From IMG/VR virus record IMGVR_UViG_3300004151_000006, positions 186,001 through 250,000 of that record: a stretch of 64,000 nucleotides of DNA, one strand, 5' to 3'. Below, piece after piece: positions 19,920-47,862 of the stretch (its first letter is position 1; every line of letters starts with the position of its first letter). Under the pieces are notes generated by a model. It saw nothing but the letters and a program-made list of their open reading frames with translations. It was not told where the DNA came from and made no database searches. A program made the position numbers and the translations under genes.

Positions 19920-22900
19920 TTAGATATCCACCGCAACATTGATAGCATCGAAAGTAAATGTCACTGCATCTGAAGTGAGTACTGCATTACTTGCTGGATA
20001 TGTGATGGAGGGTGTGGCAATGATATAATGTGGTTTAATAGTAATATTGTATTGATTAACACTGACACCTCCAACTATAGACCAATCATTGATAGCCCAA
20101 TTATTGCTAGTATCAAAACAATGTTCATATGTAGCAATACCTAAAGTCACTACTGTATCTACAGCCACTTTTGGAAAATATATAGTGATATTCTCATTGG
20201 GTAATATTTCATAATTTTTTGATATACTTAAACCTGTCAATCCAGCACCATCAATAAACCATATGTAATAACCTCTAATTTGATCAGTATCAACACCATC
20301 AGCACCACCAGTCATCGAAACAGTCATTGAATTATTACCAGTTATAGTTGTTATTATACCAGTTACTGTGGGTGCGATTGGATAAGTGTTGATTTTACGA
20401 ACAAATGTTTTTGTAGTAGTTTCTAAACCGTCTGTTGCAGTAACAGTAAATGTAATAGTATCACCACGTACAGCACTGTTCGGTATAGTTATATTGAAAG
20501 TTTCATCATTTATTAAATTAAGCGATTTTGAAAAACCTATATTCGGATAAGTTGTAGAGATATTGTAAGTTATAGTCTGATTGGTACTATTAATATCAGT
20601 TATTCCACTGATTTTACATCCAGAATATATACCACCCCACCCACTATTTCCACTACCTAAAGGTACTAAATAATTTGGTAAATTGAAGATAGCTGAACTT
20701 AAATCTGGTAAACTATTTACAAGTGATGTGACTATTTTAGTAGCAACTTCACAATAATCAGATACTACAATAGTGAAACTGACTGTAGTATTTCTGGTAA
20801 TGTTATTACCAACAGTCATAGTGAATGACTGTCCACCAGGTATTGCAGTAGTATTAAAATCATGAGAAAAAGTAATATTTGCATCATTAGCATATAACCC
20901 ATATTCTACAACAGATTGACCAGCATCAGATGAACTACCACCTGTGATATTTAAAGTGTATATGCCGCCGGGTTTAATAATTGGAGGTAAATTATTAATG
21001 ACTGCACCACTTGCATTTGGTACCGTATTTATAATAGAAGTAAATGTGGTGTTGACAGTTTCTAATCCATCAGAAATGGTTACTGTGAATGTAATTGTAC
21101 TACCACGGGTAGCATCACTAGCAACAGATAAAGAAATATTTTCACCACTAGTGATATCAGTAGATTTGGATAATATCACTTTGGTAGTACTTGGTACAAT
21201 AGACATTTTCAATGTTTGATTATCAATATCTGTAGCAGTGGCTGAAATTGAATAGGTTGCACCAGGTACCAAATATGGAACAACATTGTGTGTAATAGCT
21301 GTTGAAGGTAAGGTATTAATTTTAGTAGTGAATACTTTATTGATGGTAGTTAGTCCATCACTAACAGCAACTGTCACTGTTATTATTTCTCCACGTGTGG
21401 CAGATTCACCTATAATGAGATTTATGCTTTCACCTGAAGCTATTCCGATATTTTTAGAGAATGTGGCATATAATTTATTTGAAGAGATTGAATATGTGAG
21501 TACTTGCCCATCGGGATCAGTAGCACCAGATATAGAAAAAGGTACAGTGCTGTTGGGTTTCACAATACTTGGAATTGTAGTAATAAGATTAGTTATTACA
21601 GGAGTATTATTGATCTTAATAGTTTTAGTAATACTCGATGTTTCAATTCCATCATTTCCAATAATCGTAAAAATAAGTGTTGTGTTTTCAGCGATATCAC
21701 CAATAATTACATCAAATGATTCGTTATGCATTAAACCTGTATTCTTTGAAAATGATACACCAACAGTATTGCAACTGATTGAATAAGTCAATCCACCAAT
21801 AACAGTCACATCAGTCATTCCTGAAAGGGTAGAAGTATAAGAAGTATTTGGTTTTACTATATTGGGTGTATTGAGTATTACATTTGACATATTGGGCAAT
21901 ACGTTAATAAGTACACCCATTGGTGAAGGTGTTGATTCTAAACCATCACTAGCAAAGATAGTAATATTAGGTGAACTACCACGAGTGATATCATTAGTTA
22001 CAGTCATGGTGATTTCTTCATCTGGTGCAATATCTGTAGTTTTGGAAAAACTTACTTTGGGGTCATTGCATACAATAGAATACAAGATAGCTGTCCCATT
22101 TGGGTCATTGAATCCAGAAAAAGAAAGTGGAGTAACTGTACCGGGGGCTACAATAGAAGGAATACCTGCCACCAAATCACCAATAGGTAGAGTATTTATT
22201 GCAGCGGTAAACGTATCTGTATTATATTCAAGCCCATCAAAGATCGTCACCGTAAAGATGATGGTCTTTCCACGAGTGATACCAACCTGTGGTGTAATGG
22301 CGAAAACTTCATTAATTGCAATACCAGCACTTTTAGAGAAATGTACATTTATATCATCACTCGTAATTGAATATGTGAGAGTTTGATTAGACTGTTCATC
22401 AATACTGGATACTGATACATTATAATCTTGTCCAGGTACTAATATTTCAGGTAAATTTTCAATTATAATACCTTCGGGCAATGTATTTACAGTGATAGGA
22501 AAAGTTTTATCTTTTGTAATATATCCATCATGTACAGATACTGTAAATATGACAGTGCTACCACGAATAACATCAGAATCTATTGACACAGTGAGTGCTT
22601 CATTTTCAAGAATATTGTTATCTTTAGAAAAAGTGAATTTCGGATCAGAAGATACAATACTGTATGTGAGTACTTGCCCATCGGGATCAGTAGCACCAGA
22701 TATACTGAATGGTACAGTACTATTGGGTTTCACAATAGTGGGTAAGTTTAATACCATATCGGTGATTATCGGTAATTGGTTGACTTTAAAAGTCTTTGTA
22801 ATCGATATACTTTCCACACCATCAGAAATATCAACAGTAAAAGTAACTATAGTTCCCAGTGGAATAGTTTCAGTGATGGTCATCATAAATGTTTCATTGG

Positions 22901-25900
22901 GTACCAATTTTTCAGATTTAGAAAATGACACATTTAAATTATCAGCACTAATGTCATATGTGAGGTTTTGATTATCCACATCTACACTAGTAATATTCAT
23001 ATCCACAGTTTGTCCAGGGATTACATATTGTGGAAAGTTATTAATAGTAACAATGTTGGAAGGTAAATGATTAATAATAGATGATATAGTTTTTGATGAA
23101 GTTTCTAATCCATCACTACCTGTGATAGTAAAAGTGATAGTACTACCACGAACAATATTACCAACATGGATATCAAAGTTTTCACCGTTAATGAGATCTG
23201 TAGATTTGGAAAAACTAATATCAGAATTATCACAAGTGATGATATATTTAAGATTTGTTTGACCGGGAGTTATATCTGTGATACCCGAAATGTGTACATT
23301 ATTGAGAGTGATATTTGGTGCAAAATATTCAGGAATGACTGCCGTAACATTCGTCATATCTGGTAAAGTATTAATATATGTGGTGAATGTATCCTTAAAT
23401 GCAGATTCTAATCCATCTGATGCAATGACTGTGAAATAAATATTTTCACCACGGATGATTCCGCTACCAATTGACATAGTAAATGTTTCACCTTCAATTA
23501 ATCCAGTTGATTTAGAAAAACTGATATTTGGATTCACTGTTTGAATGGTGTATGTGAGAGTAGAACTATTAATATCAGTAGCACCAGTAATGTTAAGTGT
23601 ATAATCTTCATTGGGGATACAGATAGTTGGGAGATTATTAATATTGAGTGCAGAGAGATCGGGAAGATTGTTGATTAAAGTACCACGAATGTGTTGATTG
23701 GTTTCTAATCCATCACTACCTGTGATAGTAAAAGTGGGATTTGTATTGCGTGCAGTATTACTAATAATAGTATCGAATGGTTCATTAGACGTGAGATCCG
23801 TAGACTTAGAAAATGTAATGGTAGGATCATTGCAAACAATAGAATATGTGAGTGGTTGTGCATGTGTATCAGTAATACCATTTAATTTAGTAGAATATGT
23901 AGCATTGGGTTTTATAATATTTGGTAATGAATAAGATATAGCAGTCATATTAGGAATAGTATTTACTTCATATACCAGTGTTTTATTAACAGATTCCAAT
24001 CCATCCATGACGGTCACAGTAAATGTAACAGCACTACCACGAGTAGTGTTGGTAAAGTTAACAATAATAGATTCACCGGGATCAATATCATTTACTTTAG
24101 AAAAATTGACACTCAGATCACTACTAACAATAGCATATTTAAGAGTTTGGGAATTGATATCACTACCACCATTTAAACTAATTTCATAATCAAAATTGGG
24201 CTTTACAATAAATGGGAGATTGTTTATAATTACATCAGTAGCTATCGGAAGTGTATTGGCTTCAGTGGTAATAGTCATATTGGTGGTCTCTAATCCATCA
24301 GAAATAGTCACAGTTAATGTGATGGGAGTACCACGATCAATGTTGTTAGCTACTAACATGGTAAATGTTTCACCACTGGTAATATCAGTAGATTTACTAA
24401 AAGTGATACCAGTATTATTACTAGAAATACTGTAATGTAAATCTTGTACAATGTCCATATCGGTAGAAATAATAGTAATGGGATAATTTTGTCCAGGGAT
24501 TAACAAATCAGGTACATTATGTGATATCCCAATTGAAGGCAGTGTATTAATAACAGAATAATATTCTTTAGTATTGGTTTCTAAACCATCAAATGTGGTG
24601 ACAGTGAAAGTAATGGTGCTACCACGAACTATATCAGCAGCAAAGCTAACATCAATATTTTCACCATTAGCAATGTTAATATCTTTAGAGAAAGTCACTT
24701 TAGGATCATTGGCTGCAATAGAATATACTATTCCTGGGATAGTCAATGTGGTATCAATAGCACCAATAACAGTAACAGTATGTGTACTATTGGGTTTTAC
24801 AATGGAGGGTACATCAAAATGAAGACCTGTAAGTATTGGAAGAGTGTTGACAATTGACTGTTTTATTGTGGGTGCACTATATTCCAAACCATCCGATCCA
24901 ATGATGGTGAAATTTACGGTATTTCCACGGGTCACATTACCAGTAGTGATAGTGAATATTTCACCTTCTGTAATACCTGTAGATTTGGAGATAGTGATAC
25001 TACCATCATTAACTGTGATTCCATATGTAAGAGTCTGCCCACCAGAGGTATCAGTGATACCAGTAAGAGTTACATCATTATACATCGTATTTGGTTTAAT
25101 GATATTAGGGAGATTAAAATTAATATCTGACATGTTGGGTAAAGTATTAACATATACATCAAACATCTTTTCTACAGTTTCAAGACCATGAGCTTTTACA
25201 GTAAATGTGACTGTAGATCCACGAGAGATATTTGTATTTGTGGTGATCTGAAATGATTCACCATCACTAAGACCTGAGGCTTTAGTAAAAGTTATCATGC
25301 CTTCAGGAGCATTGCTGGAGATATCATACACCAAAGGTACACCACTGTCATTTTCTGTACCATTAATATTAACCATATAGGGAGTATTTGGTTTTACAAT
25401 AGTAGGCAATGTATTGATTTGTGTATTGGTCATATCAGGTAATACATATGCGTGACTCGTAACATTAATATCGATAGATTCCATACCATCAAAGATAGTC
25501 ACTTTAAACAATACAGCATCACCACGAACAATATCATCACTTGTAAAGATGGTCACTGATTCATTGGGAGAAATACCTGTAGTTTTAGATAATGTTACTT
25601 TGGGATGTAAAGATATTACAGTATATGTAAGTGCTTGTCCATCGGGTTCAGTAGAAGTAAATACACATGTGGTATTTTCACCAGGAATGAGGAATGTAGG
25701 AATTGTATGTATTAAATCATTGATAGGGAGTTGATTTACTTTAGTGGTGATAGTTTTTTGGATGGTTTCTACACCATCAGAAATGTCTACTAAAATATCA
25801 ATAGATTTACCACGCAGAACATCATTAGTGACATTCATCTGTACTGGATCATCAGGATGAATATTGGTTGAAGGATTAAAAGCAACATGTGTATCATTAG

Positions 25901-27695
25901 CTAACAGCGTATATGTGATTTCTTGTTCATCAAATTCATTAGAATCAAAAGTAAGATCATACGTAGAGTTGGGTTTGATATAATCTGGTATGTTGTGAGC
26001 TAATACGTTAGATGGCAACATGTTAATTCTAGTAGTAAAGATCTTTGGTACCACTTCAAGACCATCAGTAATTAAACAAGTAAAAGATACGATATTTCCA
26101 CGGAGAACATTATTATTTACAGTGATAGTAATTTCTTCATCAACATTAAGATCGAAAGATTTATTTAAAACGATGTTGGTGGGATCATCAGTAATAATAG
26201 CATAACTAATCAATTGACCATCAACATCATTGACTCCAGAGATTTTGAAATTATAACTACCATTAGGTTTAATGTATTCTGGAAGAGTAGAGTTAATATT
26301 TGTGATATCAGGGAGTGTGTTAATTCTAGTAGTAAATATTTTATTGACAGTAGCACCAACACTATCAGTGACTGTCACTGTGATACTGACTAAAGTACCC
26401 CGATTAATATCCTGTGGCACAAACATCGTGACGGTTTCATTATTATCAATATTGATATTTTTAGTAAATGTAATAGTGGGCTGGTTGGTAGTAATGGCAT
26501 ATTTAAGAGACAATCCTTCTGGATCAACAGCACCAGAGATTGTAAAATCGATATTACTGTCTGGTTTTATGATAGTTGGAATAGATGTTGTGAGAGAAGT
26601 GATATTGGGAAGTTGATTGATCTTAGCTGTATTGAATGTACGAGTACTACTACCCATATAGCTATCAATAGCTATTACATCGAACACGATAGTGCTACCT
26701 GCGGTGGCACTATCAGCTACAATGATAGAGACTATTTCAAGTGGATTGATATTTTCTATTTTAGAGAATGTAATATGTGGATCTGTGGAGACAATATTAT
26801 ATTTGATATTGTGACCATCGGGATCGGTGGCACCAGATAATTGAAAATTGGTGCTAGTGTTTTTAGCTACCAAGTTAGGAAGAGTACATGTTAAAGTAGA
26901 TATATCGGGCAGTTGGTTGATCTTCAAACTAAAAGATTTAGTAGCCATACCATCTTTAGTATCATGTGCAGTCACTAAAAAGGACACAGTACTTCCACGT
27001 TCAGCATCATCGGCAAGAGTAAATGAAATATAATCATTTTCTATGATACCAGAAGTTTGATTAAACACTAAACTTGTATCTGAAATGGAATATAAAAGAC
27101 TATCTCCATAAGGAATATCAATATCAGTAGCTCCAGAAAAAGATATTGAGATGGTGTCTCCAGGATTAGCATAAAGTGGAAGACCATTGCATATTAAATT
27201 AGTGAGATCTGGTGCAACATTGTTGGTGATAGTATATTCTACCATGGTGGGAGGTGAAATATTGTTGACTTCATCATAAGCATAAAACGTGATCACCTGT
27301 TTTTCAAATCGGTCACCCACTAAAGCTATTGTAACTGTAGCACTATTGTTAATAACCTGGGGCTCTTCTATGGTAATGACAGTATCATCAGATTTAATGA
27401 TCTTAAATTTAGTAATACGGGTACCCACCAGCAAAGGTGTGGCTGTCAAAGTGATCATATATTCTTCTTCAGATTCTACTGTAAGAGGACCACTGATGAT
27501 GGGTTTTTCAATAGCTATAGGGATCTTAGCTACTTCAGCACGGATATCAGGGTGTGCTTCTTCACTAATATTGTGTGTAGCAACATAAGCAATATTGGAA
27601 CGCAAAAGGTTACTGGTATTTTCAATTTCAGCACTCGTAACAACTACTTGGTCAATTGCATCCTGCAATGTCTTGAGATCATCAGCTGAAGGCAT
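19920..27695 (-). CDS. Giant Ig/cadherin-like repeat tail-fibre stalk, 2591 aa
   Basis: AAAGGAG RBS before ATG 27695; fibre-head motif HNISEEAHPDIR; about 24 tandem ~97-aa repeats (N-x-L-P...ATDPDGQxLTYSI...FSK...RG...FTVTxSDG). Confidence 0.85.
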   Translation of the reverse strand: MPSADDLKTLQDAIDQVVVTSAEIENTSNLLRSNIAYVATHNISEEAHPDIRAEVAKIPIAIEKPIISGPLTVESEEEYMITLTATPLLVGTRITKFKIIKSDDTVITIEEPQVINNSATVTIALVGDRFEKQVITFYAYDEVNNISPPTMVEYTITNNVAPDLTNLICNGLPLYANPGDTISISFSGATDIDIPYGDSLLYSISDTSLVFNQTSGIIENDYISFTLADDAERGSTVSFLVTAHDTKDGMATKSFSLKINQLPDISTLTCTLPNLVAKNTSTNFQLSGATDPDGHNIKYNIVSTDPHITFSKIENINPLEIVSIIVADSATAGSTIVFDVIAIDSYMGSSTRTFNTAKINQLPNITSLTTSIPTIIKPDSNIDFTISGAVDPEGLSLKYAITTNQPTITFTKNINIDNNETVTMFVPQDINRGTLVSITVTVTDSVGATVNKIFTTRINTLPDITNINSTLPEYIKPNGSYNFKISGVNDVDGQLISYAIITDDPTNIVLNKSFDLNVDEEITITVNNNVLRGNIVSFTCLITDGLEVVPKIFTTRINMLPSNVLAHNIPDYIKPNSTYDLTFDSNEFDEQEITYTLLANDTHVAFNPSTNIHPDDPVQMNVTNDVLRGKSIDILVDISDGVETIQKTITTKVNQLPINDLIHTIPTFLIPGENTTCVFTSTEPDGQALTYTVISLHPKVTLSKTTGISPNESVTIFTSDDIVRGDAVLFKVTIFDGMESIDINVTSHAYVLPDMTNTQINTLPTIVKPNTPYMVNINGTENDSGVPLVYDISSNAPEGMITFTKASGLSDGESFQITTNTNISRGSTVTFTVKAHGLETVEKMFDVYVNTLPNMSDINFNLPNIIKPNTMYNDVTLTGITDTSGGQTLTYGITVNDGSITISKSTGITEGEIFTITTGNVTRGNTVNFTIIGSDGLEYSAPTIKQSIVNTLPILTGLHFDVPSIVKPNSTHTVTVIGAIDTTLTIPGIVYSIAANDPKVTFSKDINIANGENIDVSFAADIVRGSTITFTVTTFDGLETNTKEYYSVINTLPSIGISHNVPDLLIPGQNYPITIISTDMDIVQDLHYSISSNNTGITFSKSTDITSGETFTMLVANNIDRGTPITLTVTISDGLETTNMTITTEANTLPIATDVIINNLPFIVKPNFDYEISLNGGSDINSQTLKYAIVSSDLSVNFSKVNDIDPGESIIVNFTNTTRGSAVTFTVTVMDGLESVNKTLVYEVNTIPNMTAISYSLPNIIKPNATYSTKLNGITDTHAQPLTYSIVCNDPTITFSKSTDLTSNEPFDTIISNTARNTNPTFTITGSDGLETNQHIRGTLINNLPDLSALNINNLPTICIPNEDYTLNITGATDINSSTLTYTIQTVNPNISFSKSTGLIEGETFTMSIGSGIIRGENIYFTVIASDGLESAFKDTFTTYINTLPDMTNVTAVIPEYFAPNITLNNVHISGITDITPGQTNLKYIITCDNSDISFSKSTDLINGENFDIHVGNIVRGSTITFTITGSDGLETSSKTISSIINHLPSNIVTINNFPQYVIPGQTVDMNITSVDVDNQNLTYDISADNLNVSFSKSEKLVPNETFMMTITETIPLGTIVTFTVDISDGVESISITKTFKVNQLPIITDMVLNLPTIVKPNSTVPFSISGATDPDGQVLTYSIVSSDPKFTFSKDNNILENEALTVSIDSDVIRGSTVIFTVSVHDGYITKDKTFPITVNTLPEGIIIENLPEILVPGQDYNVSVSSIDEQSNQTLTYSITSDDINVHFSKSAGIAINEVFAITPQVGITRGKTIIFTVTIFDGLEYNTDTFTAAINTLPIGDLVAGIPSIVAPGTVTPLSFSGFNDPNGTAILYSIVCNDPKVSFSKTTDIAPDEEITMTVTNDITRGSSPNITIFASDGLESTPSPMGVLINVLPNMSNVILNTPNIVKPNTSYTSTLSGMTDVTVIGGLTYSISCNTVGVSFSKNTGLMHNESFDVIIGDIAENTTLIFTIIGNDGIETSSITKTIKINNTPVITNLITTIPSIVKPNSTVPFSISGATDPDGQVLTYSISSNKLYATFSKNIGIASGESINLIIGESATRGEIITVTVAVSDGLTTINKVFTTKINTLPSTAITHNVVPYLVPGATYSISATATDIDNQTLKMSIVPSTTKVILSKSTDITSGENISLSVASDATRGSTITFTVTISDGLETVNTTFTSIINTVPNASGAVINNLPPIIKPGGIYTLNITGGSSSDAGQSVVEYGLYANDANITFSHDFNTTAIPGGQSFTMTVGNNITRNTTVSFTIVVSDYCEVATKIVTSLVNSLPDLSSAIFNLPNYLVPLGSGNSGWGGIYSGCKISGITDINSTNQTITYNISTTYPNIGFSKSLNLINDETFNITIPNSAVRGDTITFTVTATDGLETTTKTFVRKINTYPIAPTVTGIITTITGNNSMTVSMTGGADGVDTDQIRGYYIWFIDGAGLTGLSISKNYEILPNENITIYFPKVAVDTVVTLGIATYEHCFDTSNNWAINDWSIVGGVSVNQYNITIKPHYIIATPSITYPASNAVLTSDAVTFTFDAINVAVDI
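21493..22704. repeat. Identical 42-nt direct repeat inside the Ig-repeat gene (21493-21534 and 22663-22704)
   Basis: TATGTGAGTACTTGCCCATCGGGATCAGTAGCACCAGATATA occurs at both positions, 1170 nt apart. Confidence 0.85.
23101..23736. repeat. Identical 36-nt direct repeat inside the Ig-repeat gene (23101-23136 and 23701-23736)
   Basis: GTTTCTAATCCATCACTACCTGTGATAGTAAAAGTG occurs twice, 600 nt apart. Confidence 0.85.
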
Positions 27696-27748
27696 ATGTG
27701 ATACTCCTTTAAGAGTAGATTTTATCATGTATGTAGTACGATACACGC

Positions 27749-29931: not shown

Positions 29932-30597
29932 ATGACACCATACCGAGATCCACGTGATATCCAAGAGTCCATCGTAGGACATATTCAAAATAGTTGCAAT
30001 GATTGGCCAGGTAAAATATCTACAGTCATCTTTTTATCTGGGTGTAATATCTTTTGTCCAACTTGTCATAATTGGGAGATAGCACATCCTCAAGGAAAAC
30101 TGGATAAAGTATTGCTAGATAATATCCTTATGTATATTCAAGCTAAAAGAAAATGGTTAGATGGAGTAGTCATTTCTGGTGGTGAACCTCTTATACACAA
30201 TAATCTGTCTGATTTAGTATTCCAACTCAAATCTATCTCTGATCTCCCCATCAAATTAGATACTAATGGATTGGATCCCGATGCATTAGATGAGATATTA
30301 GCTACCCAGTATATAGATACAGTCGCTATGGATATCAAAGCCTATTGGGATAAATATCCAACAGTCACTGGATGTAAACAAAAGGATCCAGAATATTTTC
30401 AACATCACATTGAAAGATCCATCCAAGTCATACAAGCTTATCAAGATGTTCACCTCTATTTTCGGACTACCTTGGTACCAGAGATCAATGATCCAATTTA
30501 TCTTGAACAAGTAAAGAGCATCATCCCGGCTGGGTATGTCCATAGGTATCAGACCTATAGACCCATTGACCACACCACTACCAAAGGATCACAGTAG
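29932..30597 (+). CDS. nrdG: Anaerobic ribonucleotide reductase activating radical-SAM enzyme
   Basis: CNIFCPTCHN (CxxxCxxC), GVVISGGEP, IKLDTNG, AMDIK, FRTT; directly upstream of nrdD. Confidence 0.9.
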   Translation: MTPYRDPRDIQESIVGHIQNSCNDWPGKISTVIFLSGCNIFCPTCHNWEIAHPQGKLDKVLLDNILMYIQAKRKWLDGVVISGGEPLIHNNLSDLVFQLKSISDLPIKLDTNGLDPDALDEILATQYIDTVAMDIKAYWDKYPTVTGCKQKDPEYFQHHIERSIQVIQAYQDVHLYFRTTLVPEINDPIYLEQVKSIIPAGYVHRYQTYRPIDHTTTKGSQ

Positions 30598-30598
30598 T

Positions 30599-33500
30599 AT
30601 GGAATCCCGTCAGATCGTCAAGCGTGATGGACGTATTGAATCTTGGTCCACACCTCGTATTGGTGATGCTATCTTTAAAGCATTCAAAGCTTCTGGTATC
30701 AAAGATCGAATGATGGCTGATAGACTCGCTAAGAAAGTAGCTGATAAAGTCTTTGAAGATGGTCGTGTCATGGTGGAACAAGAATTCGTACAGGATACAG
30801 TTGAATCTATTTTGATGAAATCGGGATTTGATGAAGTAGCTAGACGGTATATCATTTATCGTGAACAACGTAGAGCTATTCGATCAATGGATACTACATA
30901 CATGCTTGATAGTAAAGAAATTATTGATAGTTATTTAGATGAATCAGATTGGCGTGTAAATGAAAATGCTAATATTGGTATGAGTGTATCTGGTCTTATT
31001 CTTCATATGCAGGGTGAGATGCAGAAAAAATATGTACTCAATAGTGTATATACTAAAGAAATTCGAGAAGCACATATGAATGGGTATTTCCATATACATG
31101 ATTTATCATTCTCACTTGTCGCATACTGCTCAGGATGGTCATTTAGAGATCTCTTATTGGATGGATTTTCTATTAAAAATGCATGCGCTGCAGGACCTGC
31201 AAATCATTTTACTGCTGCACTCGGTCAGTGTGTGAATTTTCTTGGGACTTTACAAAATGAGTGGGCTGGTGCACAAGCATTAAACAATTTTGATACATAT
31301 CTTGCACCATTTATTCGACATGATGGTTTGGATTATGAACAAACTAAACAGGCTATTCAGAATTTTATTCACAGTATTAATACTACTTCTCGTTGGGGAG
31401 GACAATGTCCTTTCACCAATGTCACCATTGATGTAACTTGTCCTGAACATATGAAAAATGAACCCGTGATCATTGGTGGAAAATATCAAGAATCCACCTA
31501 TGGTGAATATCAAACTGAAATGAATATGTTCAATAATGCATTTGTTGAAATTTTAATGAAAGGTGATAATAATGGTTCAATTTTTTCATATCCTATTCCG
31601 ACGTATAATGTTACTAAAGATTTTCCTTGGGAAAGTGAAGTGGTGACCAATGTATTGGGTATGACTGCTAAATACGGTATTCCTTATTTTCAGAATTTTA
31701 TCAATAGTGATCTTGATCCTAAGGATATTCGTAGTATGTGTCCTCTCACTGGTGATACTAAGGTACTAGTCCGATCTACACGTAATTTTACACAAACTGC
31801 GGACATTAAAACAATTTATGAAAGGAGTGTTAAAAATAATTTAGTTTATGAAGTTTGGACACCCGAAGGTTGGTCCTTTGCACGTCCAGTAAAAATGCCC
31901 ATGACAGATGTGTATGAAATTACTCTCAGTAATGGTAGTACAATTAAAATGGGTGAAAATCATCTTCAGCCGGTGCGTGGAATAAATCAACTGGAGATCT
32001 TGTCGGCAAAAGATCTTAAAATGGATATGTGGATTCCGTATAATAAAGATGTAATTCCGAATTATGGCTTAGGAAATTATAGTCTTGGATATGCAGTTGG
32101 TGCTTATCTTGGTGATGGTTCGCTTACCTCTAAAGGTATTCTTTATTCCTTGAATCAAACTACTAAATTAAAGACCGCTTATGAATTGGCTGAAATTTGG
32201 GCATTCTTTGGTTTTAGTTCTAAATTGATTCCTTCTACTGATGGTGAATTGTTAACACTTAGAATTAATGGCCGTCCATGGGATTTAATTTCTGATTATG
32301 TTGGTGGAGATGGTGCTATAACAAAATATATTTCAGATGCAGTGTTTGATACTACTGAAGAATTTAAATTTGGACTTATTGATGGTCTAATGGATACCGA
32401 TGGATCTCGTGAAAAGAAACGTTTATATACTTCTTCTTTGGAACTTGTCAATACACTTAAAACACTCTTTACTCAGCTGGGAAAAAAATGTCGACTGTGT
32501 TCAGTGGATACTCGTGATGGTAGGCTGGGAACTGCGCCAAATTATTGTTTGAGTTTTACAGATAGAACTAGTTATGGTAATATGTTTAATGAAGATTCTG
32601 AATACAATTATTATTCAATTGTTAAAATTGAAAATTTAGGAAAACTTAATAATGAAGAATTGTATTGTTTTGAAGTGGCAAATGCTGATAACTTATTTAT
32701 GTTGGCTGACGGTATGATTACACACAACTGTCGATTGTCTCTTAACCTCAATGAAATTCGTAAGAAGACTGGTGGGTTATTTGGTGCTGGAGATCTGACT
32801 GGTTCAGTTGGTGTAACAACTCTCAATCTTTCTAAATTGGCATATCTTGCTCAAGATGAAAATGAATTTATGGATCTCATTACTGAATATGCTGATTTGG
32901 CTAAAGAATCTCTTGAGATTAAACGTAAATTTGTGAATAAACAATTAGAGTCTGGTCAGATGCCTTGGACTAAGAAATATCTTAAAAATGGATATGGTGG
33001 ACATTTTTCAACTATTGGCATTAATGCTGGACACGAAGCATGCATGAATCTTATTGGTAAAGGCATTGAAACTAAAGAAGGTACTGAACTCATGGTTCGA
33101 GTATTACAGCATCTTAATATACTTACCAAACAGTATCAAGAAGAAACTGGTAATCTCTATAATCTCGAGGCTGCACCTGCAGAAGGAGTAAGCTATCGAT
33201 TGGCTAAACTTGATAGAGAACTTTATGGTAAAAATATTTATATCAGTGGTAATGAAGAAACGCCATACTACACTAATTCTACAAATCTCCCCGTGAACCA
33301 CACCTCTGATGTATTTGAAGCATTGGAACATCAAGATAAATTACAACCTTTATATTCGGGTGGGACAGTTTTTCATTCCTTTTTTGGAGAAGCTATGCCC
33401 GATGTAGAATCAGTAAAAAACTTTCTAATCAAAGCTATGTCTATGACTAAGATTCCATATATTTCTATTACACCCACTTTTAGTATTTGTCCTGAACATA

Positions 33501-33709
33501 AATATATATCTGGTGAACATTTTGAATGTCCCAAATGTGGGTGTGAGACTAGCGTATATTCAAGAATCGTTGGCTATTTCAGAAGTATTTCTCGTTGGAA
33601 TGTTGGAAAAAAACAAGAATTCAAAGAAAGAAAAACATATGATATTGATTATACTGAGTTGAATTCTGAAATGAAAAATAGCACAGTCAACGAAAAGTTG
33701 GAAGTCTAA
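30599..33709 (+). CDS. nrdD: Class III ribonucleoside-triphosphate reductase with ATP cone, interrupted by an intein
   Basis: VKRDG ATP cone, HIHDL, QNEWAGAQA, RSMC[intein]CRL, YYTNS, CPEH...CPKC Zn site, glycyl-radical loop YSRIVGYF. Confidence 0.95.
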   Translation: MESRQIVKRDGRIESWSTPRIGDAIFKAFKASGIKDRMMADRLAKKVADKVFEDGRVMVEQEFVQDTVESILMKSGFDEVARRYIIYREQRRAIRSMDTTYMLDSKEIIDSYLDESDWRVNENANIGMSVSGLILHMQGEMQKKYVLNSVYTKEIREAHMNGYFHIHDLSFSLVAYCSGWSFRDLLLDGFSIKNACAAGPANHFTAALGQCVNFLGTLQNEWAGAQALNNFDTYLAPFIRHDGLDYEQTKQAIQNFIHSINTTSRWGGQCPFTNVTIDVTCPEHMKNEPVIIGGKYQESTYGEYQTEMNMFNNAFVEILMKGDNNGSIFSYPIPTYNVTKDFPWESEVVTNVLGMTAKYGIPYFQNFINSDLDPKDIRSMCPLTGDTKVLVRSTRNFTQTADIKTIYERSVKNNLVYEVWTPEGWSFARPVKMPMTDVYEITLSNGSTIKMGENHLQPVRGINQLEILSAKDLKMDMWIPYNKDVIPNYGLGNYSLGYAVGAYLGDGSLTSKGILYSLNQTTKLKTAYELAEIWAFFGFSSKLIPSTDGELLTLRINGRPWDLISDYVGGDGAITKYISDAVFDTTEEFKFGLIDGLMDTDGSREKKRLYTSSLELVNTLKTLFTQLGKKCRLCSVDTRDGRLGTAPNYCLSFTDRTSYGNMFNEDSEYNYYSIVKIENLGKLNNEELYCFEVANADNLFMLADGMITHNCRLSLNLNEIRKKTGGLFGAGDLTGSVGVTTLNLSKLAYLAQDENEFMDLITEYADLAKESLEIKRKFVNKQLESGQMPWTKKYLKNGYGGHFSTIGINAGHEACMNLIGKGIETKEGTELMVRVLQHLNILTKQYQEETGNLYNLEAAPAEGVSYRLAKLDRELYGKNIYISGNEETPYYTNSTNLPVNHTSDVFEALEHQDKLQPLYSGGTVFHSFFGEAMPDVESVKNFLIKAMSMTKIPYISITPTFSICPEHKYISGEHFECPKCGCETSVYSRIVGYFRSISRWNVGKKQEFKERKTYDIDYTELNSEMKNSTVNEKLEV
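31742..32728 (+). mobile_element. Intein with LAGLIDADG homing endonuclease in NrdD (start 31742 Pro or 31739 Cys)
   Basis: (C)PLTGDTKV block A, ENH block B, GAYLGDGS and GLMDTDGS LAGLIDADG motifs, YCFEV block F, ITHN|C splice junction. Confidence 0.9.
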
Positions 33710-33803: not shown

Positions 33804-35312
33804 TTGTATATGCGGGCTATTTATAATGAAGATATGGATTTCTTTGATAAATCCATATCTGATGAACAGTGGTTTCTCAATAAAATTTTAGAAGGAAGAT
33901 TTGAATTATTAGAAAATGATACGGTGATCTATGATAAAGTAAGAAATACTCACAGAAAACCTGGAATAAAACATAATGGTGATACTCCATCCGTCCGGTA
34001 TAAAGTGTATGATATTAAAATTGCATCCCCACAACGTGGTAAGAGATCAATTTATCTTCATAAATTTGTATTTATATTTTATACAAAAAATATAGTACTA
34101 AAAAATACTTATTTAAAGTTTAAAGATGGGAATATTGGGAATACAAGTTTTGATAATTTGGAATTAGTATATAAACGAAAAGAAAATGATGATTTTTATA
34201 ATGATGAAATTTCTGCAAAGCAATGGTTTTATTCTGAAATTATAAAAGATCGTTTTGTATTATCTGAAAATGATACTAAAATATACGATAAGGTGCGAGA
34301 TAAATATGTCATACCTGGAGAATTTTCAATTTATTATAAAGACAATAAACGCAAAAAGAATTATCTTCGGTATTGCGTTGATTCTAGTATTCCGTATTAT
34401 AAAGAACGGTATATTCAATTGCATCAATTCGTTTGGATGTATTATCATAAACAATTGATACCTGAAGGACATGAGGTACACCATAAAGACGAAGATAAAC
34501 ACAATAATTGGCATGGAAATTTAGAACTGATATCTAATTTTGACCACATGCGACATCACAACAACAGTACAGAACGTCGACAAAAATTGACATCTCCTGA
34601 AAGTATAGCTCGACAAGTGAAACATAGACTATTATATCGAATGTTAAAACATAAGTATTGTTTTTCTGAAAAGAAGCTTTGTAGTAAGTGTAAAAGGTTA
34701 TTACCATTTATACGTTTTGATAAAGCAAACGAACAAAATTATATTTTAAAGTTAGAATCACTATGTAAAGAATGTAAATATATTTTATATGGGGACAATA
34801 AAAAGAACATAGACCGCTATCAATTCCCATCCGGGGTTTTATCAGATAAAATTGTTCTTGATATAAGATTTTTATTTAACATTGTAAATCAATCTTTCTA
34901 TCTTGTACAAAAGAAGTATCCTAACATTTCTAAACAAGATCTTAAAGATATCATTCTAGGTAATACATACACTCACATAGATACACTTCATGGTATCCAC
35001 GATACTCCTTATAGAAATGAAAAATATATCAATCAAATTGAACACTGTCATATACAACATGCATACAAACAGGCTGATTTCACTCCAGAAGAGTTATCCA
35101 AGATCTATGGAAGATCATTAAATGAAATTATCTATGTACTTACCGTAGGAAGGTATAGACCAGAAATAGAAATGGTAATGGATGTGCAGAAGTATGTGAA
35201 ACTATATAACGGGATATATACACAGCGTGAAGAATATATAATTGATTTCAATAAACTCAAGGAACGTGATATTAGTATCCCCACCAATGTGGTAGCTGGT
35301 GAATTAGTTTAA
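33804..35312 (+). CDS. Free-standing HNH homing endonuclease with two HNH-like modules
   Basis: LHKFVF...FKDGNIGNTSFDNLEL and LHQFVW...VHHKDEDKHNNWHGNLEL; CSKC/CKEC Zn pairs. Confidence 0.75.
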   Translation: MYMRAIYNEDMDFFDKSISDEQWFLNKILEGRFELLENDTVIYDKVRNTHRKPGIKHNGDTPSVRYKVYDIKIASPQRGKRSIYLHKFVFIFYTKNIVLKNTYLKFKDGNIGNTSFDNLELVYKRKENDDFYNDEISAKQWFYSEIIKDRFVLSENDTKIYDKVRDKYVIPGEFSIYYKDNKRKKNYLRYCVDSSIPYYKERYIQLHQFVWMYYHKQLIPEGHEVHHKDEDKHNNWHGNLELISNFDHMRHHNNSTERRQKLTSPESIARQVKHRLLYRMLKHKYCFSEKKLCSKCKRLLPFIRFDKANEQNYILKLESLCKECKYILYGDNKKNIDRYQFPSGVLSDKIVLDIRFLFNIVNQSFYLVQKKYPNISKQDLKDIILGNTYTHIDTLHGIHDTPYRNEKYINQIEHCHIQHAYKQADFTPEELSKIYGRSLNEIIYVLTVGRYRPEIEMVMDVQKYVKLYNGIYTQREEYIIDFNKLKERDISIPTNVVAGELV

Positions 35313-39704: not shown

Positions 39705-39905
39705 ATGTCCAATTCAACAGCAAGTCAAATTAATTTATCTGGAGTGAATACTGATTTTGATGGAGATGAAATACTTTACATTAAAATACAAAAACCACGT
39801 AAATGGTTATCTGGTAAAGAAAATAAACGTATCCATAATAAAATTACTAAACGTGGTCGTCCATTTAATATTAAAAATATAAATAGATTTCCAAAGTTAA
39901 ATTAA
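39705..39905 (+). CDS. 66-aa ORF carrying the RNAP catalytic motif NTDFDGDE followed by a basic tail
   Basis: Motif encoded at 39747-39770; weak RBS. Confidence 0.45.
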   Translation: MSNSTASQINLSGVNTDFDGDEILYIKIQKPRKWLSGKENKRIHNKITKRGRPFNIKNINRFPKLN

Positions 39906-39913
39906 TGGATAGG

Positions 39914-39942
39914 AGGAGGACCACCATAATGGTGGTCCTCCT
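39914..39942. terminator. 14-bp stem hairpin
   Basis: AGGAGGACCACCAT-A-ATGGTGGTCCTCCT; T-rich run downstream. Confidence 0.65.
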
Positions 39943-40150
39943 ATCTACTTTATATTTTTTAATAAAAGTACGACATTCATTACGCTATAAATATATATCA
40001 TCTATGCGAAGACACATAGATGATGATGTCTCGGGGACTCGACATGATCATTTGTGTGAATCAAATCGAATATCATCACATGGTGTGATGAATACGATGG
40101 GTCATATAACCCAAATACTTTTAGTCTTAAACTTTCTCAGGAGTATACTC

Positions 40151-42295
40151 ATGGCTAAGATCATCTTTCTTATCATGGTGTCAATGTTGTTAGCAGATCA
40201 TAGCTTTGGTCAGACCAAAAACAATGATCTCCCCACAGTGGAAGAAGTACAGGATAATATCCAAAGATCTGGTAAGCAGTGGACAGCTAAACGCAATAGA
40301 TTCATGGATATGAGTCAGGCTGAGATCGATGCCACACATGGAGCAGATGATTGGTCTACTCTCTCCAGAGATATGGATCTCAAAGGTTTAGAGGGTTCTC
40401 CATATGACAAAGATGTCACTGGTGTCCTCACTGATAATCCCCTTCCATCAGCACATGATTGGAGGAATCATAATGGAAAAGATTATACTACTCCAACCAA
40501 ATATCAATCCAGCTGTGGTGCATGTGTCACATTTGCAACAGTTGCTATATGGGAAACACTCCTTAAGATTCAGTACTTGGATGAAAGACCTTCATTCAAT
40601 CCGGATCTCAGTGAACAGTTTATAGTTTCATGTCCATTACCGAAATCTTGTTTTGGAGTCAATCCAACTTTTACAATACCGGATATGGTACAAAACGGTA
40701 CTTATTCGGAGACATACATCCCATACATTGCAAAGCCAGTACCTTGCAGTGAAGTGACAAGCGGTGTTGATCTTACAAAGATTGGGCATTATCGTGTTAT
40801 GAATTATGAACATGTGGTTGTGTATGAACCCGGTGGAGATGATGTGAGTATTGACATGTTAAAACGTATGTTGGTGGAGATTGGACCATTTTTCACAGTG
40901 ATGATGCAATACGATGATTTCTATCTTTATGCGGGTGGAGTATATTCCACAACACCAACTGCGAGTTATCGTGGGCTTCATGCCGTCTGTGTGATTGGGT
41001 ATGATGATGCTGAACAATGTTTCATTGTGAAAAATTCATGGGGAGATTGGTGGGGAATAAATGGTTATTTTAAGATAGCCTATTCAGAAGCTACAAAATT
41101 ATCCCGTACTACATTTGGCTTAGATACATGGGCATTTTCTGGTGCTGTCATTGATCGTGAAGAACCAGAGCAAGAGATACCCCCAATAGCCAAAGTCATA
41201 AACTTTCCCACAGGTACAATATATGCACATGATCGGGTGTACAATGTAACTTCTGAACCAGCAACTGCAGTATCATTTGCTTTTCGTACTGATGGTGGTA
41301 CCTGGAGTGAACAGATACCCATTTTAGGATCTTTGTGGATCTATGATCCCACTGATGGTCCACATACACTTGAAGTGATTACATGTAGTGTATCTGGTGC
41401 TTGTCAATCTAAAAATGATCCCACTACATATCATTGGATCAATGATACTACACCTCCAGAATTTATCAATATCACCAATCCACCAGCTGCTATCACTGAT
41501 GTCACATCTTACGTATTCAATGTCACTGCGAGTGCAGATACTGTAAAATATATGTGGGCATCTGATTTAATAAGTGGCTGGTCTGCTATGCTACCAATAT
41601 CAAATGCAACTATCACTTTAAATGATGTCCCCGATGGTAAACATTATATTATTCTGGTAGCCAGTGATGTAATCGATAATTACAGTGAGCACACTCGGGT
41701 GGAATGGACGGTATCGAGTAAAATCACAGCATTGTTAAGTGATCTCCCAAATATCAAAACTACAGATACTTCAACACGGATCACGGTATCTTCTAATTCA
41801 TCAAAATACATTGGATATCGATATCGTCTTGATGGTAGTATGTGGTCTGCAACTGCAGATAAAGATACAAAGATACAGTTATCTGGGTTATCAACAGGTG
41901 TACATACTCTTGAAGTAATTGCAGTGGGGAGTGACGGTAGTATTCAAGATGAAACTGCTACTTCAATGTATGCTTGGATAATTGAAGAAGCCGCTGCAGC
42001 TGTAGCAGTATTGCAAAATCCACCTGATTCAGTATCTACCGCATCGAAATATCAACTGTATGTTGGTGGGGAAAATACCGTGGCATATAAATATTCTATC
42101 GATGGTCAACCTTTATCACAGGAGTATGATATCAACACACCTATCAATTTGACACTTTCATCGGGCCTGCACATACTCCGGTTGTCAGGAAAGAATAATG
42201 CTGGTGTATGGCAAGAAAGTTATACCACTAACAGTTGGACAGTCAAACGGTCTACTGTAAACCTTGGTGCAGTCTATCAGCTATTATTGAATTAA
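40151..42295 (+). CDS. Secreted papain-family (C1A) cysteine protease with C-terminal Ig-like domains
   Basis: CAGGAG RBS; signal peptide MAKIIFLIMVSMLLA; QSSCGAC (Gln/Cys), GLHAVCVIGY (His), KNSWG (Asn); repeated beta-rich domains; hydrophobic C-terminus VNLGAVYQLLLN. Confidence 0.85.
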   Translation: MAKIIFLIMVSMLLADHSFGQTKNNDLPTVEEVQDNIQRSGKQWTAKRNRFMDMSQAEIDATHGADDWSTLSRDMDLKGLEGSPYDKDVTGVLTDNPLPSAHDWRNHNGKDYTTPTKYQSSCGACVTFATVAIWETLLKIQYLDERPSFNPDLSEQFIVSCPLPKSCFGVNPTFTIPDMVQNGTYSETYIPYIAKPVPCSEVTSGVDLTKIGHYRVMNYEHVVVYEPGGDDVSIDMLKRMLVEIGPFFTVMMQYDDFYLYAGGVYSTTPTASYRGLHAVCVIGYDDAEQCFIVKNSWGDWWGINGYFKIAYSEATKLSRTTFGLDTWAFSGAVIDREEPEQEIPPIAKVINFPTGTIYAHDRVYNVTSEPATAVSFAFRTDGGTWSEQIPILGSLWIYDPTDGPHTLEVITCSVSGACQSKNDPTTYHWINDTTPPEFINITNPPAAITDVTSYVFNVTASADTVKYMWASDLISGWSAMLPISNATITLNDVPDGKHYIILVASDVIDNYSEHTRVEWTVSSKITALLSDLPNIKTTDTSTRITVSSNSSKYIGYRYRLDGSMWSATADKDTKIQLSGLSTGVHTLEVIAVGSDGSIQDETATSMYAWIIEEAAAAVAVLQNPPDSVSTASKYQLYVGGENTVAYKYSIDGQPLSQEYDINTPINLTLSSGLHILRLSGKNNAGVWQESYTTNSWTVKRSTVNLGAVYQLLLN

Positions 42296-46800: not shown

Positions 46801-47862
46801 GTGAAAAAAGAAAGTGTGAATGTCATTGATGAATATATGTTCACTGATTTGGATTTCTTATTTAAAATGTATACCAAACTCAATAGACCTAAAGATCAAG
46901 ATAAGATCAAATGGTTGACGGAACATCAAGGTAAGACAGTAGCTGCCAATGAATCCCTGATATCACATGTGACTGATAAAATCATCTATATTGAAGATGA
47001 AGCACATCATTTGGTGAATGCTAATGAAGCACTCACTGTAGATAAGTACACTTACACCCCTGGGGATATAGTCATCAAATTCAAAGATTGTAATTTAGTC
47101 TTCAATAGGTATCCCATGTATCAATCTTTGATCATGTGTGGGCTCGATCATTTCAATACCCAAGCATATACCTTTGATGAATTTAATATGAAAGATGTAT
47201 ATTACTCACTCATGGAAGATAGGGGTATCAAATCTAACTACCTTAAAGCTGTTAATAGTTTCTTTGATCTCTTTATGGACCCTATCACCAAAGATGTACT
47301 TCAGCAGATGGGTGAACCAACTAATGTACAAGATCTCCTGATCAGAGCCAGTGTATTACTTACTACCAAAGATCATAAAGAGGCTTCATCTATAGCCAAC
47401 CACCGTATCCGTAGCTATGAACAATTCAATGCTATCATCTATAATGAAATGGCTAGAGCCTATGCAGCCTATCAAGTGGGTAGAGGTAAAGGTAATACTT
47501 TCAGTGTGAATCCCAATGCTGTATTCCAACGTATCATCCAGAACCCATCATTCACTATCGTAGAAGATATCAATCCTATCCAGGAATTAAAAGAAAGAGC
47601 TGGATTTACTTTTGCTGGTGTGGGTGGTCGTACATCTGAATCTTTTGTAGTGGATGATAGACGGTATCCTGAAGATGGTATTGGTATCATCTCTGAATCT
47701 ACAGTCGATAATGCTAAGGTCTCCATGAATGCTTATCTCACTGTTGATCCAACTATAGCTAATACTCGTGGTATCATTGATATTGAAGCTTTAAATAAAT
47801 TAAGTTCTAGTAATGTACTCAGTGTCACTGCACTTAATGCACCATGTGCAATGCATGATGAT
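43897..47862 (+). CDS. Virion RNA polymerase beta subunit (phiKZ gp178-like), exon 1
   Basis: PIIDSNGYCYING, LKKQMINIPICKI, LFMDPIT, HRIRSYEQF, TFAGVGGRTSESF, IGIISESTVD motifs; ends at ...HDD before the intron. Confidence 0.85.
46400..47040 (+). other. Nucleotidyltransferase-fold domain inserted in-frame in vRNAP beta
   Basis: IISGSAAM...NNDLDIVV (GS 46573-46578, DLD 46621-46629) and LNRPKDQDKIKWL; flanked by SGE, ATE, ANE and ANE. Confidence 0.6.

What the first reader, a model, noticed from the sequence alone, without database searches (positions are those of the whole stretch)
31739..32731. NrdD intein probably starts with Pro and has class-3-like residues at the radical-transfer cysteines
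Seen: RSM-C-PLTGDTKV...YCFEV...ITHN-C-RL. Knowledge: this NrdD subtype has a CC finger-loop motif (SxCCRL, as in Thermotoga NrdD); class 3 inteins lack an N-terminal nucleophile (the MP-Be DnaB intein has Pro1) and use a block-F Cys plus a block-G Thr. Inference: restoring SMCCRL needs Pro1 at 31742; F4 Cys and G5 Thr are present, but the block-B Trp of the WCT triplet is not (HLQ). Splicing would gate RNR activity directly at the active site.
Basis: partly seen in the sequence, partly recalled or inferred. Interest (0 to 1): 0.6.

Follow-up and report, generated by a model that had tools for sequence, protein, structure and literature searches.

The report
Proline-first intein in phage NrdD
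A jumbo phage's anaerobic ribonucleotide reductase gene is interrupted, right at its catalytic cysteine pair, by a self-splicing intein that starts with proline instead of the usual cysteine; it belongs to a large, apparently undescribed family that looks like a tryptophan-less variant of the rare "class 3" inteins.

Summary
The 1057-aa NrdD ORF (30536-33709) carries one 329-aa HINT + LAGLIDADG intein at residues 403-731 (31742-32728). All 115 intein-less homologues listed read MCCRL. BLASTP maps C402 and C732 onto adjacent cysteines C376 and C377 of an intein-less NrdD. The excised segment therefore runs from Pro403 to Asn731.

A profile search found at least 67 sequence clusters with the same ...SMC|P...THN|CRL arrangement. 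All 67 have His at B10, Cys at F4, Thr at G5 and terminal His-Asn. B12 is Gln, Asn or His, never Trp, and B7 is mostly Gly or Asp. At least 40 sister clusters, including the phage c-st NrdD intein, occupy the same site but start with Cys and keep TxxH.

The most likely mechanism is class 3-like, with the F4 cysteine C711 starting splicing. This is inferred, not shown. The +1 Cys aligns with the thiyl-radical cysteine, so the enzyme can work only after splicing. Conditional (redox) gating is speculation.

I rate it a new variant of a known kind. I found no description of it in the searchable literature.

The parts
30536..33709 (+). nrdD ORF (1057 aa, P0001): anaerobic class III ribonucleotide reductase precursor with ATP-cone, one intein, Zn-ribbon (CPEH...CPKCG, 33488-33541) and glycyl-radical motif RIVGY (33563-33577)
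30536..31741 (+). N-extein (residues 1-402), ending ...DIRSMC. Homology to intein-less NrdD runs from residue 25 to residue 402.
   Evidence: HSP 25-402 against 3-376 of P0005
31739..31741 (+). Cys402 (TGT), the -1 extein residue and first Cys of the restored MCCRL motif
   Evidence: (invariant 107/107)
31742..32728 (+). Intein, 329 aa, Pro403 to Asn731: HINT splicing domain with an inserted double-motif LAGLIDADG homing endonuclease
   Evidence: AF2 pLDDT 94.9, pTM 0.92; Foldseek top hits TliVMA, PhoVMA, PI-SceI and PI-PfuI inteins
31742..31771 (+). Block A, PLTGDTKVLV. Pro403 (CCT, 31742-31744) sits where Cys1 stands in sister inteins (CFxGDTKVL).
31943..31975 (+). Block B, IKMGENHLQPV: Gly473 (B7; Thr in class 1 TxxH), His476 (B10, 31961-31963), Gln478 (B12, 31967-31969, in place of the class 3 Trp)
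32084..32122 (+). First LAGLIDADG motif, LGYAVGAYLGDGS, with the acidic residue kept
32363..32407 (+). Second LAGLIDADG motif, FKFGLIDGLMDTDGS, with the acidic residue kept
32660..32704 (+). Block F, LYCFEVANADNLFML. Cys711 (F4, 32666-32668) is the proposed initiating nucleophile.
   Evidence: C in 67/67; aligns with catalytic Cys124 of the class 3 MchDnaB1 intein
32708..32728 (+). Block G, DGMITHN: Thr729 (G5), His730 (G6), Asn731 (G7, terminal Asn)
32729..32731 (+). Cys732 (TGT), the +1 residue, second Cys of MCCRL. It aligns with the thiyl-radical Cys (T4 C290, Thermotoga C330).
   Evidence: PMC4493059
32729..33709 (+). C-extein (residues 732-1057, plus stop), starting CRLSLNLNEIRKKTGG
   Evidence: HSP 732-1035 against 377-678 of P0005
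29932..30597 (+). Radical-SAM activase (NrdG-like) gene directly upstream, overlapping the nrdD start

Best explanation
The nrdD gene of this 287-kb jumbo phage encodes a precursor whose finger-loop motif M-C-C-R-L is split between the two cysteines by a 329-aa intein, Pro403 to Asn731, made of a HINT domain plus a LAGLIDADG homing endonuclease.

Residue 1 is proline, so the intein cannot make the usual N-terminal thioester. The most likely route is class 3-like:
1. The block F cysteine Cys711, helped by His476 (B10) and Thr729 (G5), attacks the Cys402-Pro403 peptide bond and forms a branched thioester.
2. The N-extein passes to Cys732 (+1).
3. Asn731 cyclises and releases the intein.
4. An S-to-N shift restores ...RSMC-CRL...

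Cys732 is the thiyl-radical cysteine, so the reductase can be active only after splicing. The endonuclease keeps both catalytic motifs and presumably homes the element into intein-free nrdD alleles.

Shown here: the boundaries, the fold, the residue pattern and the size of the family. Inferred: the order of chemical steps, splicing activity and homing.
For: Boundaries:
- All 115 intein-less homologues read MCCRL.
- C402 and C732 map to adjacent C376 and C377 of an intein-less NrdD.
- TIGR01445 position 2 aligns with L404.
- In a gap-free alignment of 107 site-mates, the -1 Cys is invariant and position 1 is Pro (67) or Cys (40).
- Inteins that do use the first Cys as residue 1 ('site a', RSM|CL...THN|CCRL) keep CCRL in the C-extein. 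The window has only CRL.

Active-looking intein:
- In 67 Pro1 clusters at 50% identity, His B10, Cys F4, Thr G5, His G6 and Asn G7 are all 67/67. The window copy keeps every near-invariant residue.
- The AF2 model has pLDDT 94.9 and matches solved intein-endonucleases.
- NrdG, the Zn site and the glycyl-radical motif are intact.

Class 3-like:
- There is no nucleophile at position 1, plus Cys F4 and Thr G5.
- B7 is Gly or Asp, as in characterised class 3 inteins (PMC7891396).
- Loss of Thr B7 goes with Pro1: 5/67 against 34/40 in Cys1 sisters.
- The profile aligns Cys F4, His B10 and Thr G5 with the catalytic Cys124, His65 and Thr143 of the class 3 MchDnaB1 intein, and Gln B12 with its Trp67.
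- AceL NrdHF (MCT) shows that class 3 chemistry works without Trp.
- Bvi IcmO shows that it works with Cys+1, and that Cys+1 cannot replace Cys F4.
Against: - No biochemical data exist for any member.
- Trp at B12, part of the defining WCT triplet, is absent. In tested class 3 inteins its mutation impairs or abolishes splicing (PMC5222942).
- Cys F4 and Thr G5 are equally conserved in the Cys1 sister inteins at this site (39/40). Their conservation is therefore not specific to loss of the N-terminal nucleophile, and Cys F4 may have another role.
- With a Cys at +1, a class 2-type direct attack is chemically possible.
- Phylogenetic affiliation with the canonical class 3 clade is unresolved.
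Confidence: 0.7

Rival explanations
1. Class 2-like splicing. The boundaries are the same (Pro403 to Asn731), but Cys732 (+1) attacks the Cys402-Pro403 peptide bond directly, as in KlbA inteins. Cys711 acts only as a helper or structural residue, standing in for the usual F4 Asp.
For: Cys is present at +1, whereas most class 3 inteins have Ser or Thr. Trp B12 is absent. Cys F4 is also conserved in Cys1 sisters that do not need it as a first nucleophile.
Against: Cys F4 and Thr G5 are invariant in 67/67 Pro1 clusters. [quoted passage not shown] Class 2 inteins are known only in KlbA, with Ala1 (PMC3196547).
Confidence: 0.15
2. Ordinary class 1 intein starting at Cys402, with Pro as an inserted second residue. 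Splicing would give RSM-CRL with a single cysteine.
For: Cys402 immediately precedes the HINT domain, and a Cys-first reading is the default for inteins.
Against: All 115 intein-less homologues have CC. C402 and C732 map to adjacent residues of an intein-less NrdD. Block A spacing fits Pro at position 1. Sister inteins read SC|CF, with both a -1 Cys and a Cys1. Inteins that do start at the first Cys leave CCRL downstream. Thr B7, which class 1 N-S acyl shift uses, is lost.
Confidence: 0.03
3. A decayed, non-splicing intein: nrdD in this phage is a pseudogene, or the precursor is dead.
For: Non-conservative replacement of residue 1 blocks splicing in tested class 1 inteins (PMC3196547). One class 3-like intein, Arsp-FB24, is a proven pseudogene.
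Against: The 1057-codon frame is uninterrupted, with all catalytic NrdD motifs and an adjacent nrdG. The same Pro1 design is kept, with invariant catalytic residues, across 67 clusters down to about 30% identity. These include mini-inteins that have lost the endonuclease, which implies selection for splicing.
Confidence: 0.07

Closest known systems
Class 3 inteins (prototype mycobacteriophage Bethlehem DnaB intein; Msm and Mch DnaB-1 inteins)
   Same: Non-nucleophilic residue 1 (Pro in MP-Be). Cys at F4, Thr at G5, His at B10, terminal His-Asn. B7 is not fixed as Thr (Gly or Asp occur). Phage-associated, often with a LAGLIDADG endonuclease.
   Different: B12 is Gln, not Trp. +1 is Cys, not Ser or Thr. 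-1 is Cys. The insertion site is the NrdD finger loop rather than an ATPase P-loop. Per-domain profile scores to canonical WCT inteins are low (median 27 bits, against 54 for Cys1 NrdD site-mates).
AceL NrdHF split class 3 intein (MCT triplet; PDB 6ZGQ; PMC7891396)
   Same: An experimentally proven class 3 mechanism without the Trp. Sits in a ribonucleotide reductase gene on a phage-like contig.
   Different: Naturally split. Ala1 and Ser+1. Lacks both assisting histidines. Its host is the class Ib NrdF-type subunit. B12 is hydrophobic Met, whereas here it is polar Gln.
Burkholderia vietnamiensis IcmO class 3 intein
   Same: Class 3 with Cys at +1. Shows the order F4 branch then +1 branch when both are thioesters.
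   Different: Has the full WCT triplet. It is a mini-intein in a different host protein.
Clostridium phage c-st / D-1873 NrdD intein, with relatives in Desulfovibrio phage 7757 and MT835492
   Same: Same insertion point between the two cysteines (SC|C...THN|CRL). Same F4 Cys and G5 Thr. Homologous LAGLIDADG domain. 26-27% identity over 91-96% of a query spanning the intein and about 25 flanking extein residues each side.
   Different: Starts with Cys1 and keeps the class 1 TxxH block B. B12 is Asn or His.
Class 2 (KlbA) inteins
   Same: No N-terminal nucleophile, and Cys at +1.
   Different: Ala1, no F4 Cys, restricted to archaeal KlbA, and direct attack by Cys+1.

Membership tests
Intein (HINT splicing domain) | HINT fold with blocks A, B, F and G, flanked by host-protein halves that are contiguous in intein-less homologues | tested here: met
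   Intein_splicing, intein_Nterm and intein_Cterm; the first two score below their curated cut-offs, 29.2 vs 35.8 and 22.4 vs 24.5 bits; intein_Cterm passes, 17.4-18.8 vs 15.6; AF2 pLDDT 94.9; Foldseek E 5e-16 to the TliVMA intein; exteins abut at C376/C377 of P0005.
Intein (HINT splicing domain) | Terminal His-Asn and a nucleophilic +1 residue | tested here: met
   H730, N731 and C732.
Class 3 intein | No Cys, Ser or Thr at intein position 1 | tested here: met
   Pro403.
Class 3 intein | Cys at block F position 4 (C2:4) | tested here: met
   Cys711, 67/67 in the family. It aligns with Cys124 of MchDnaB1.
Class 3 intein | Thr at block G position 5 | tested here: met
   Thr729, 67/67.
Class 3 intein | Trp at block B position 12 (the W of the WCT triplet) | tested here: not met
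   Gln478. The family has Q 50, N 15, H 2 and W 0. Deviations at this position are about 6% by sequence weight in Hoffmann et al. (17 of 1702 triplets are not WCT); no QCT is listed.
Class 3 intein | Ser or Thr at +1 (typical; Bvi IcmO is the known exception) | tested here: not met
   Cys732.
Class 3 intein | Splicing proceeds through a branched thioester on the F4 Cys (the mechanistic definition) | not testable with these tools
   Needs mutagenesis and detection of the intermediate.
Class 3 intein | Membership of the single class 3 clade proposed by Tori and Perler | tested here: inconclusive
   The trees are poorly resolved. 'Pro1 + WCT as one clade' is not rejected (AU 0.82), and neither is 'Pro1 alone' (AU 0.76). 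Per-domain scores favour the Cys1 NrdD site-mates.
Class 2 (KlbA-type) intein | Ala1, KlbA host, no F4 Cys, direct +1 attack | tested here: not met
   Pro1, NrdD host, F4 Cys present. The chemistry is not testable here.
LAGLIDADG homing endonuclease (double-motif) | Two LAGLIDADG helices, each ending in an acidic residue, in an I-DmoI / PI-SceI-like fold | tested here: met
   The motifs at 32084-32122 and 32363-32407 keep ..GDGS and ..DTDGS. LAGLIDADG_3 matches at 4.8e-4, just under the cut-off. Foldseek hits I-DmoI and PI-SceI. Cleavage activity is not testable.
Class III ribonucleotide reductase NrdD (PRK08270 type) | NRDD domain, ATP-cone, the conserved active-site Cys in the YCSGWS motif, the finger-loop CC, the Zn site and the C-terminal glycyl-radical motif | tested here: met
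   (950 bits against a cut-off of 548).

The most novel reading that the evidence does not exclude
The Pro1 (Q/N)CT inteins and their Cys1 sisters at the identical NrdD site are a natural class 1 / class 3 pair. The F4 cysteine was already in place, and loss of Cys1 then forced a switch of initiating nucleophile. This would be either a second origin of class 3 chemistry or its ancestral state.

In addition, three cysteines (-1, F4, +1) crowd the splice site of an oxygen-sensitive enzyme. Splicing could therefore be disulfide-locked in oxidising conditions, so that the radical cysteine is delivered only under anoxia.
Probability: 0.2. Interest if true: 0.75.

Novelty: new variant of a known kind. 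Interest (0 to 1): 0.55.

Why it matters
Class 3 inteins are defined by the WCT triplet. They are reported almost only in ATPase P-loop sites with Ser or Thr at +1, and are argued either to descend from one phage progenitor or to be a convergent HINT lineage.

Here there is a large family (at least 67 clusters at 50% identity, found on large viral contigs). It has the class 3 hallmarks (no N-terminal nucleophile, Cys F4, Thr G5) but a polar B12 and Cys at both -1 and +1. It sits in the radical loop of an anaerobic reductase. Homologous Cys1 inteins occupy the very same site.

That gives an experimentally tractable natural series for asking how an intein changes its initiating nucleophile and what the Trp is really for. 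It may also yield new Cys-junction class 3 splicing tools.

For annotation, these junctions will be mis-called by one residue if a Cys start is assumed.

Tried and rejected
- A word-indexed search with the mini-intein of P0004 found only itself and P0035. The full profile search was needed.
- Tori and Perler 2011 (PMC3133030) is not held, and the supplements of Tori 2010 are not held. I could not check whether InBase already listed a Pro1 NrdD intein. Hoffmann 2020 Table S1 lists 3 NCT and 1 HCT class 3 triplets in nr, which may belong to this family. It lists no QCT.
- The pattern scan of GTDB genome contigs found no cellular copy. The scan is pattern-limited, so this is weak evidence of absence.
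- The AU test on the full 118-row set did not finish in two 300-s runs. I replaced it with a 50-row subsample. The topology remains unresolved.
- Model coordinates are not exposed, so the Cys711-to-scissile-bond distance could not be measured.
- The spliced (joined) NrdD sequence was deliberately not built. The exteins were searched and compared by reference only.
- The Fisher tests treat related clusters as independent, so they overstate significance.
Full report
**Observation.** The window lies in a 286,688-bp IMG/VR virus record with inverted terminal repeats, estimated complete: a jumbo phage. ORF 30536-33709 (+) encodes a 1057-aa protein, P0001. It matches Pfam NRDD (1.6e-172), ATP-cone, Intein_splicing and LAGLIDADG_3. 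It matches NCBIfam PRK08270 NrdD at 950 bits against a cut-off of 548.
- 31736-31750 is ATG TGT CCT CTC ACT, giving M401 C402 P403 L404 T405.
- 32720-32737 is ACA CAC AAC TGT CGA TTG, giving T729 H730 N731 C732 R733 L734.
- GENHLQP is in block B and LYCFEV is in block F.

A radical-SAM NrdG-like gene lies directly upstream at 29932-30597. The NrdD keeps the conserved active-site Cys motif (YCSGWS), the Zn-ribbon and the RIVGY glycyl-radical motif.

**Where the intein starts.** Five independent lines agree on Pro403.
1. Of the 119 best N-extein homologues, 115 have no intein and all 115 read R[SA]MCCRL. The four that carry an intein all read RSMC|PL...THN|CRL.
2. BLASTP against the intein-less Maridesulfovibrio salexigens enzyme gives two HSPs. 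Residues 25-402 match 3-376 and residues 732-1035 match 377-678. C402 and C732 are therefore neighbours in the mature protein, and exactly residues 403-731 are extra.
3. The intein N-terminal model TIGR01445 aligns its position 2 with L404, so its Cys1 position falls on P403.
4. Phage c-st, phage D-1873, Desulfovibrio phage 7757 and a gut phage contig carry a homologous intein at the same place. It is 26-27% identical over 91-96% of a query spanning the intein and its short extein flanks. It reads SC|CFDG...THN|CRL, so it has a -1 Cys and also a Cys1. In a gap-free MAFFT alignment of 107 inteins at this site, the -1 Cys is invariant, the next column is Pro (67) or Cys (40), and block A then runs in register.
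5. A third group of NrdD inteins does use the first cysteine as residue 1 (RSM|CL...THN|CCRL). Those keep CCRL downstream. The window has only CRL.

The class 1 reading with Cys402 as residue 1 is therefore very unlikely.

**How big the family is.** A profile of the five first-found inteins was searched against 1.84 billion 50%-identity representatives. It gave 439 hits at E <= 1e-3. Among the best 150, 67 clusters have the Pro1 arrangement at the NrdD C|C site, 40 have Cys1, and about 20 are N-terminally unaligned.

| Position | Pro1 group (n = 67) | Cys1 group (n = 40) |
|---|---|---|
| B7 | G 36, D 12, S 11, T 5, E 3 | T 34, S 5, D 1 |
| B10 | H 67 | H 40 |
| B12 | Q 50, N 15, H 2, no W | N 20, H 12, F 3, C 2, 3 others |
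| F4 | C 67 | C 39 |
| G5 | T 67 | T 39 |
| G6, G7 | H 67, N 67 | H 40, N 40 |

The window copy keeps every near-invariant residue.

Four further IMG/VR contigs of 82-201 kb carry SMC|P...NHLQP...YC...THN|CRL. A pattern scan of GTDB genomes found none. Cluster look-ups show mostly metagenomic sources. The window's phage genome holds only this one copy.

**Fold.** AlphaFold2 was run on residues 393-741 with the 107-sequence alignment. It gives pLDDT 94.9 and pTM 0.92. Foldseek's best PDB matches are the intein-endonucleases TliVMA, PhoVMA, PI-SceI and PI-PfuI, with I-DmoI for the endonuclease part. Both LAGLIDADG motifs keep their acidic residues (32084-32122 and 32363-32407). A working homing endonuclease is plausible but untested.

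**Mechanism.** Class 3 inteins were defined by a non-nucleophilic residue 1 co-varying with Trp B12, Cys F4 and Thr G5, usually with Ser or Thr at +1 and a P-loop insertion site (PMC2807308). The prototype MP-Be DnaB intein starts with Pro.

Hoffmann et al. 2020 use the operational definition 'no Cys at the N-end plus Cys at C2:4'. They report the following:
- WCT occurs in 1685 of 1702 nr inteins. Rare variants are FCV 7, NCT 3, WCS 3, and MCT, HCT, WCC and FCS at 1 each. No QCT is listed.
- B7 is not conserved, and Gly or Asp occur in characterised class 3 inteins.
- The MCT intein AceL NrdHF splices by the class 3 route.

Bvi IcmO shows that class 3 works with Cys+1, and that Cys+1 cannot replace Cys F4 (PMC5222942).

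The window's intein has Pro1, Gly B7, His B10, Cys F4, Thr G5 and Cys+1. The family profile aligns these residues with His65, Cys124 and Thr143 of the solved class 3 MchDnaB1 intein, and aligns its Gln with Trp67. I therefore consider a class 3-like pathway most likely, at about 0.7: Cys711 attacks the Cys402-Pro403 bond, the N-extein transfers to Cys732, Asn731 cyclises, and an S-to-N shift follows.

The main reservation is that Cys F4 and Thr G5 are just as conserved in the Cys1 sisters. Their presence alone therefore does not prove that they took over initiation, and a class 2-type direct attack by Cys732 remains possible (about 0.15). A dead intein is unlikely, given the intact frame and the conservation across deep divergence. 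That divergence includes mini-inteins that have lost the endonuclease.

**Consequence for the enzyme.** Thermotoga S328-C-C-R331 aligns with T4 M288-G-C290-R291 (PMC4493059). The second Cys, here Cys732 at the +1 position, is therefore the thiyl-radical cysteine. From my own knowledge of the NrdD subtypes (Wei et al. 2014, not checked here), the first Cys is the extra redox partner found in CC-type NrdDs. A 329-residue insertion in this loop must block activity until splicing occurs. That is the ordinary situation for inteins in active sites. No data here show that splicing is conditional. A disulfide lock among the three clustered cysteines is an attractive but untested idea. A partial precedent is oxidative inhibition of the class 3 DnaB-1 intein; this rests on the title 'Mycobacterial DnaB helicase intein as oxidative stress sensor' (PMC6195587, listed), my recollection of the paper, and peroxide inhibition of MchDnaB1 N-cleavage (PMC7664689, figure legend seen).

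**Evolution.** Trees of the 157-158 HINT columns kept are poorly resolved.
- A single origin of Pro1 is not rejected (AU 0.76).
- Grouping Pro1 with canonical WCT inteins is not rejected either (AU 0.82) and gave the best likelihood.
- Per-domain profile scores are higher for the Cys1 NrdD site-mates (median 54 bits) than for WCT inteins (median 27 bits, over partial alignments).

The shared insertion site and the homologous endonuclease argue that the Pro1 and Cys1 NrdD inteins are one lineage. Whether that lineage is sister to the classical class 3 clade, nested in it, or independent of it remains open.

**Novelty.** Full-text searches found NrdD inteins mentioned only generically: phage c-st, Lactococcus phage 949 and the Jug jumbo phages. 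None describes a Pro1 or class 3-type NrdD intein. I rate it a new variant of a known kind. One caveat applies: a few NCT or HCT members may already sit unnamed in published class 3 lists.

**Not done.**
- The spliced NrdD sequence was not assembled. The exteins were handled by reference only.

Noticed in passing
window 33804-35312 (+): A 502-aa ORF immediately downstream of nrdD carries an HNH_3 endonuclease domain (residues ~206-250) and matches several PHROG HNH families. It looks like a free-standing homing endonuclease next to the intein-bearing gene.
   Followed up: partly
window 29932-30597 and 30536: The NrdG-like radical-SAM ORF overlaps the first ATG of nrdD by about 60 nt. Homology of NrdD to intein-less relatives begins only at residue 25, so the real nrdD start may lie further downstream.
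   Followed up: no
P0035:176-426, P0142, P0210, P0127, P0146 (relatives, not the window): Related phage NrdDs carry a second intein at the other active-site cysteine (...GY|CFTGDT...VHN|C[AS]GW). It has Cys1 and an F-C-V triplet. The window's NrdD (VAY-CSGWS, 31118-31141) has no intein there.
   Followed up: partly
P0163:~528-772, P0199:~384-710, P0229 (relatives): A third intein allele sits one residue upstream (RSM|CL...THN|CCRL). The two-cysteine finger-loop motif therefore hosts at least three intein types: site a Cys1, site b Cys1 and site b Pro1.
   Followed up: partly
window 43897-47916 (+), 39905-42295 (+), 19920-27746 (-): The window holds a multisubunit RNA polymerase beta-like gene (phrog_3148, 2e-159), a papain-family cysteine protease domain protein (796 aa) and a 2608-aa ORF on the minus strand. 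No tRNA genes were found anywhere in the window, and GC content is about 0.30-0.41.
   Followed up: no
window 31742-32728 compared with the flanks: The intein's GC content (0.342) is indistinguishable from the N-extein (0.359) and the C-extein (0.345). There is no compositional sign of a recent invasion.
   Followed up: yes
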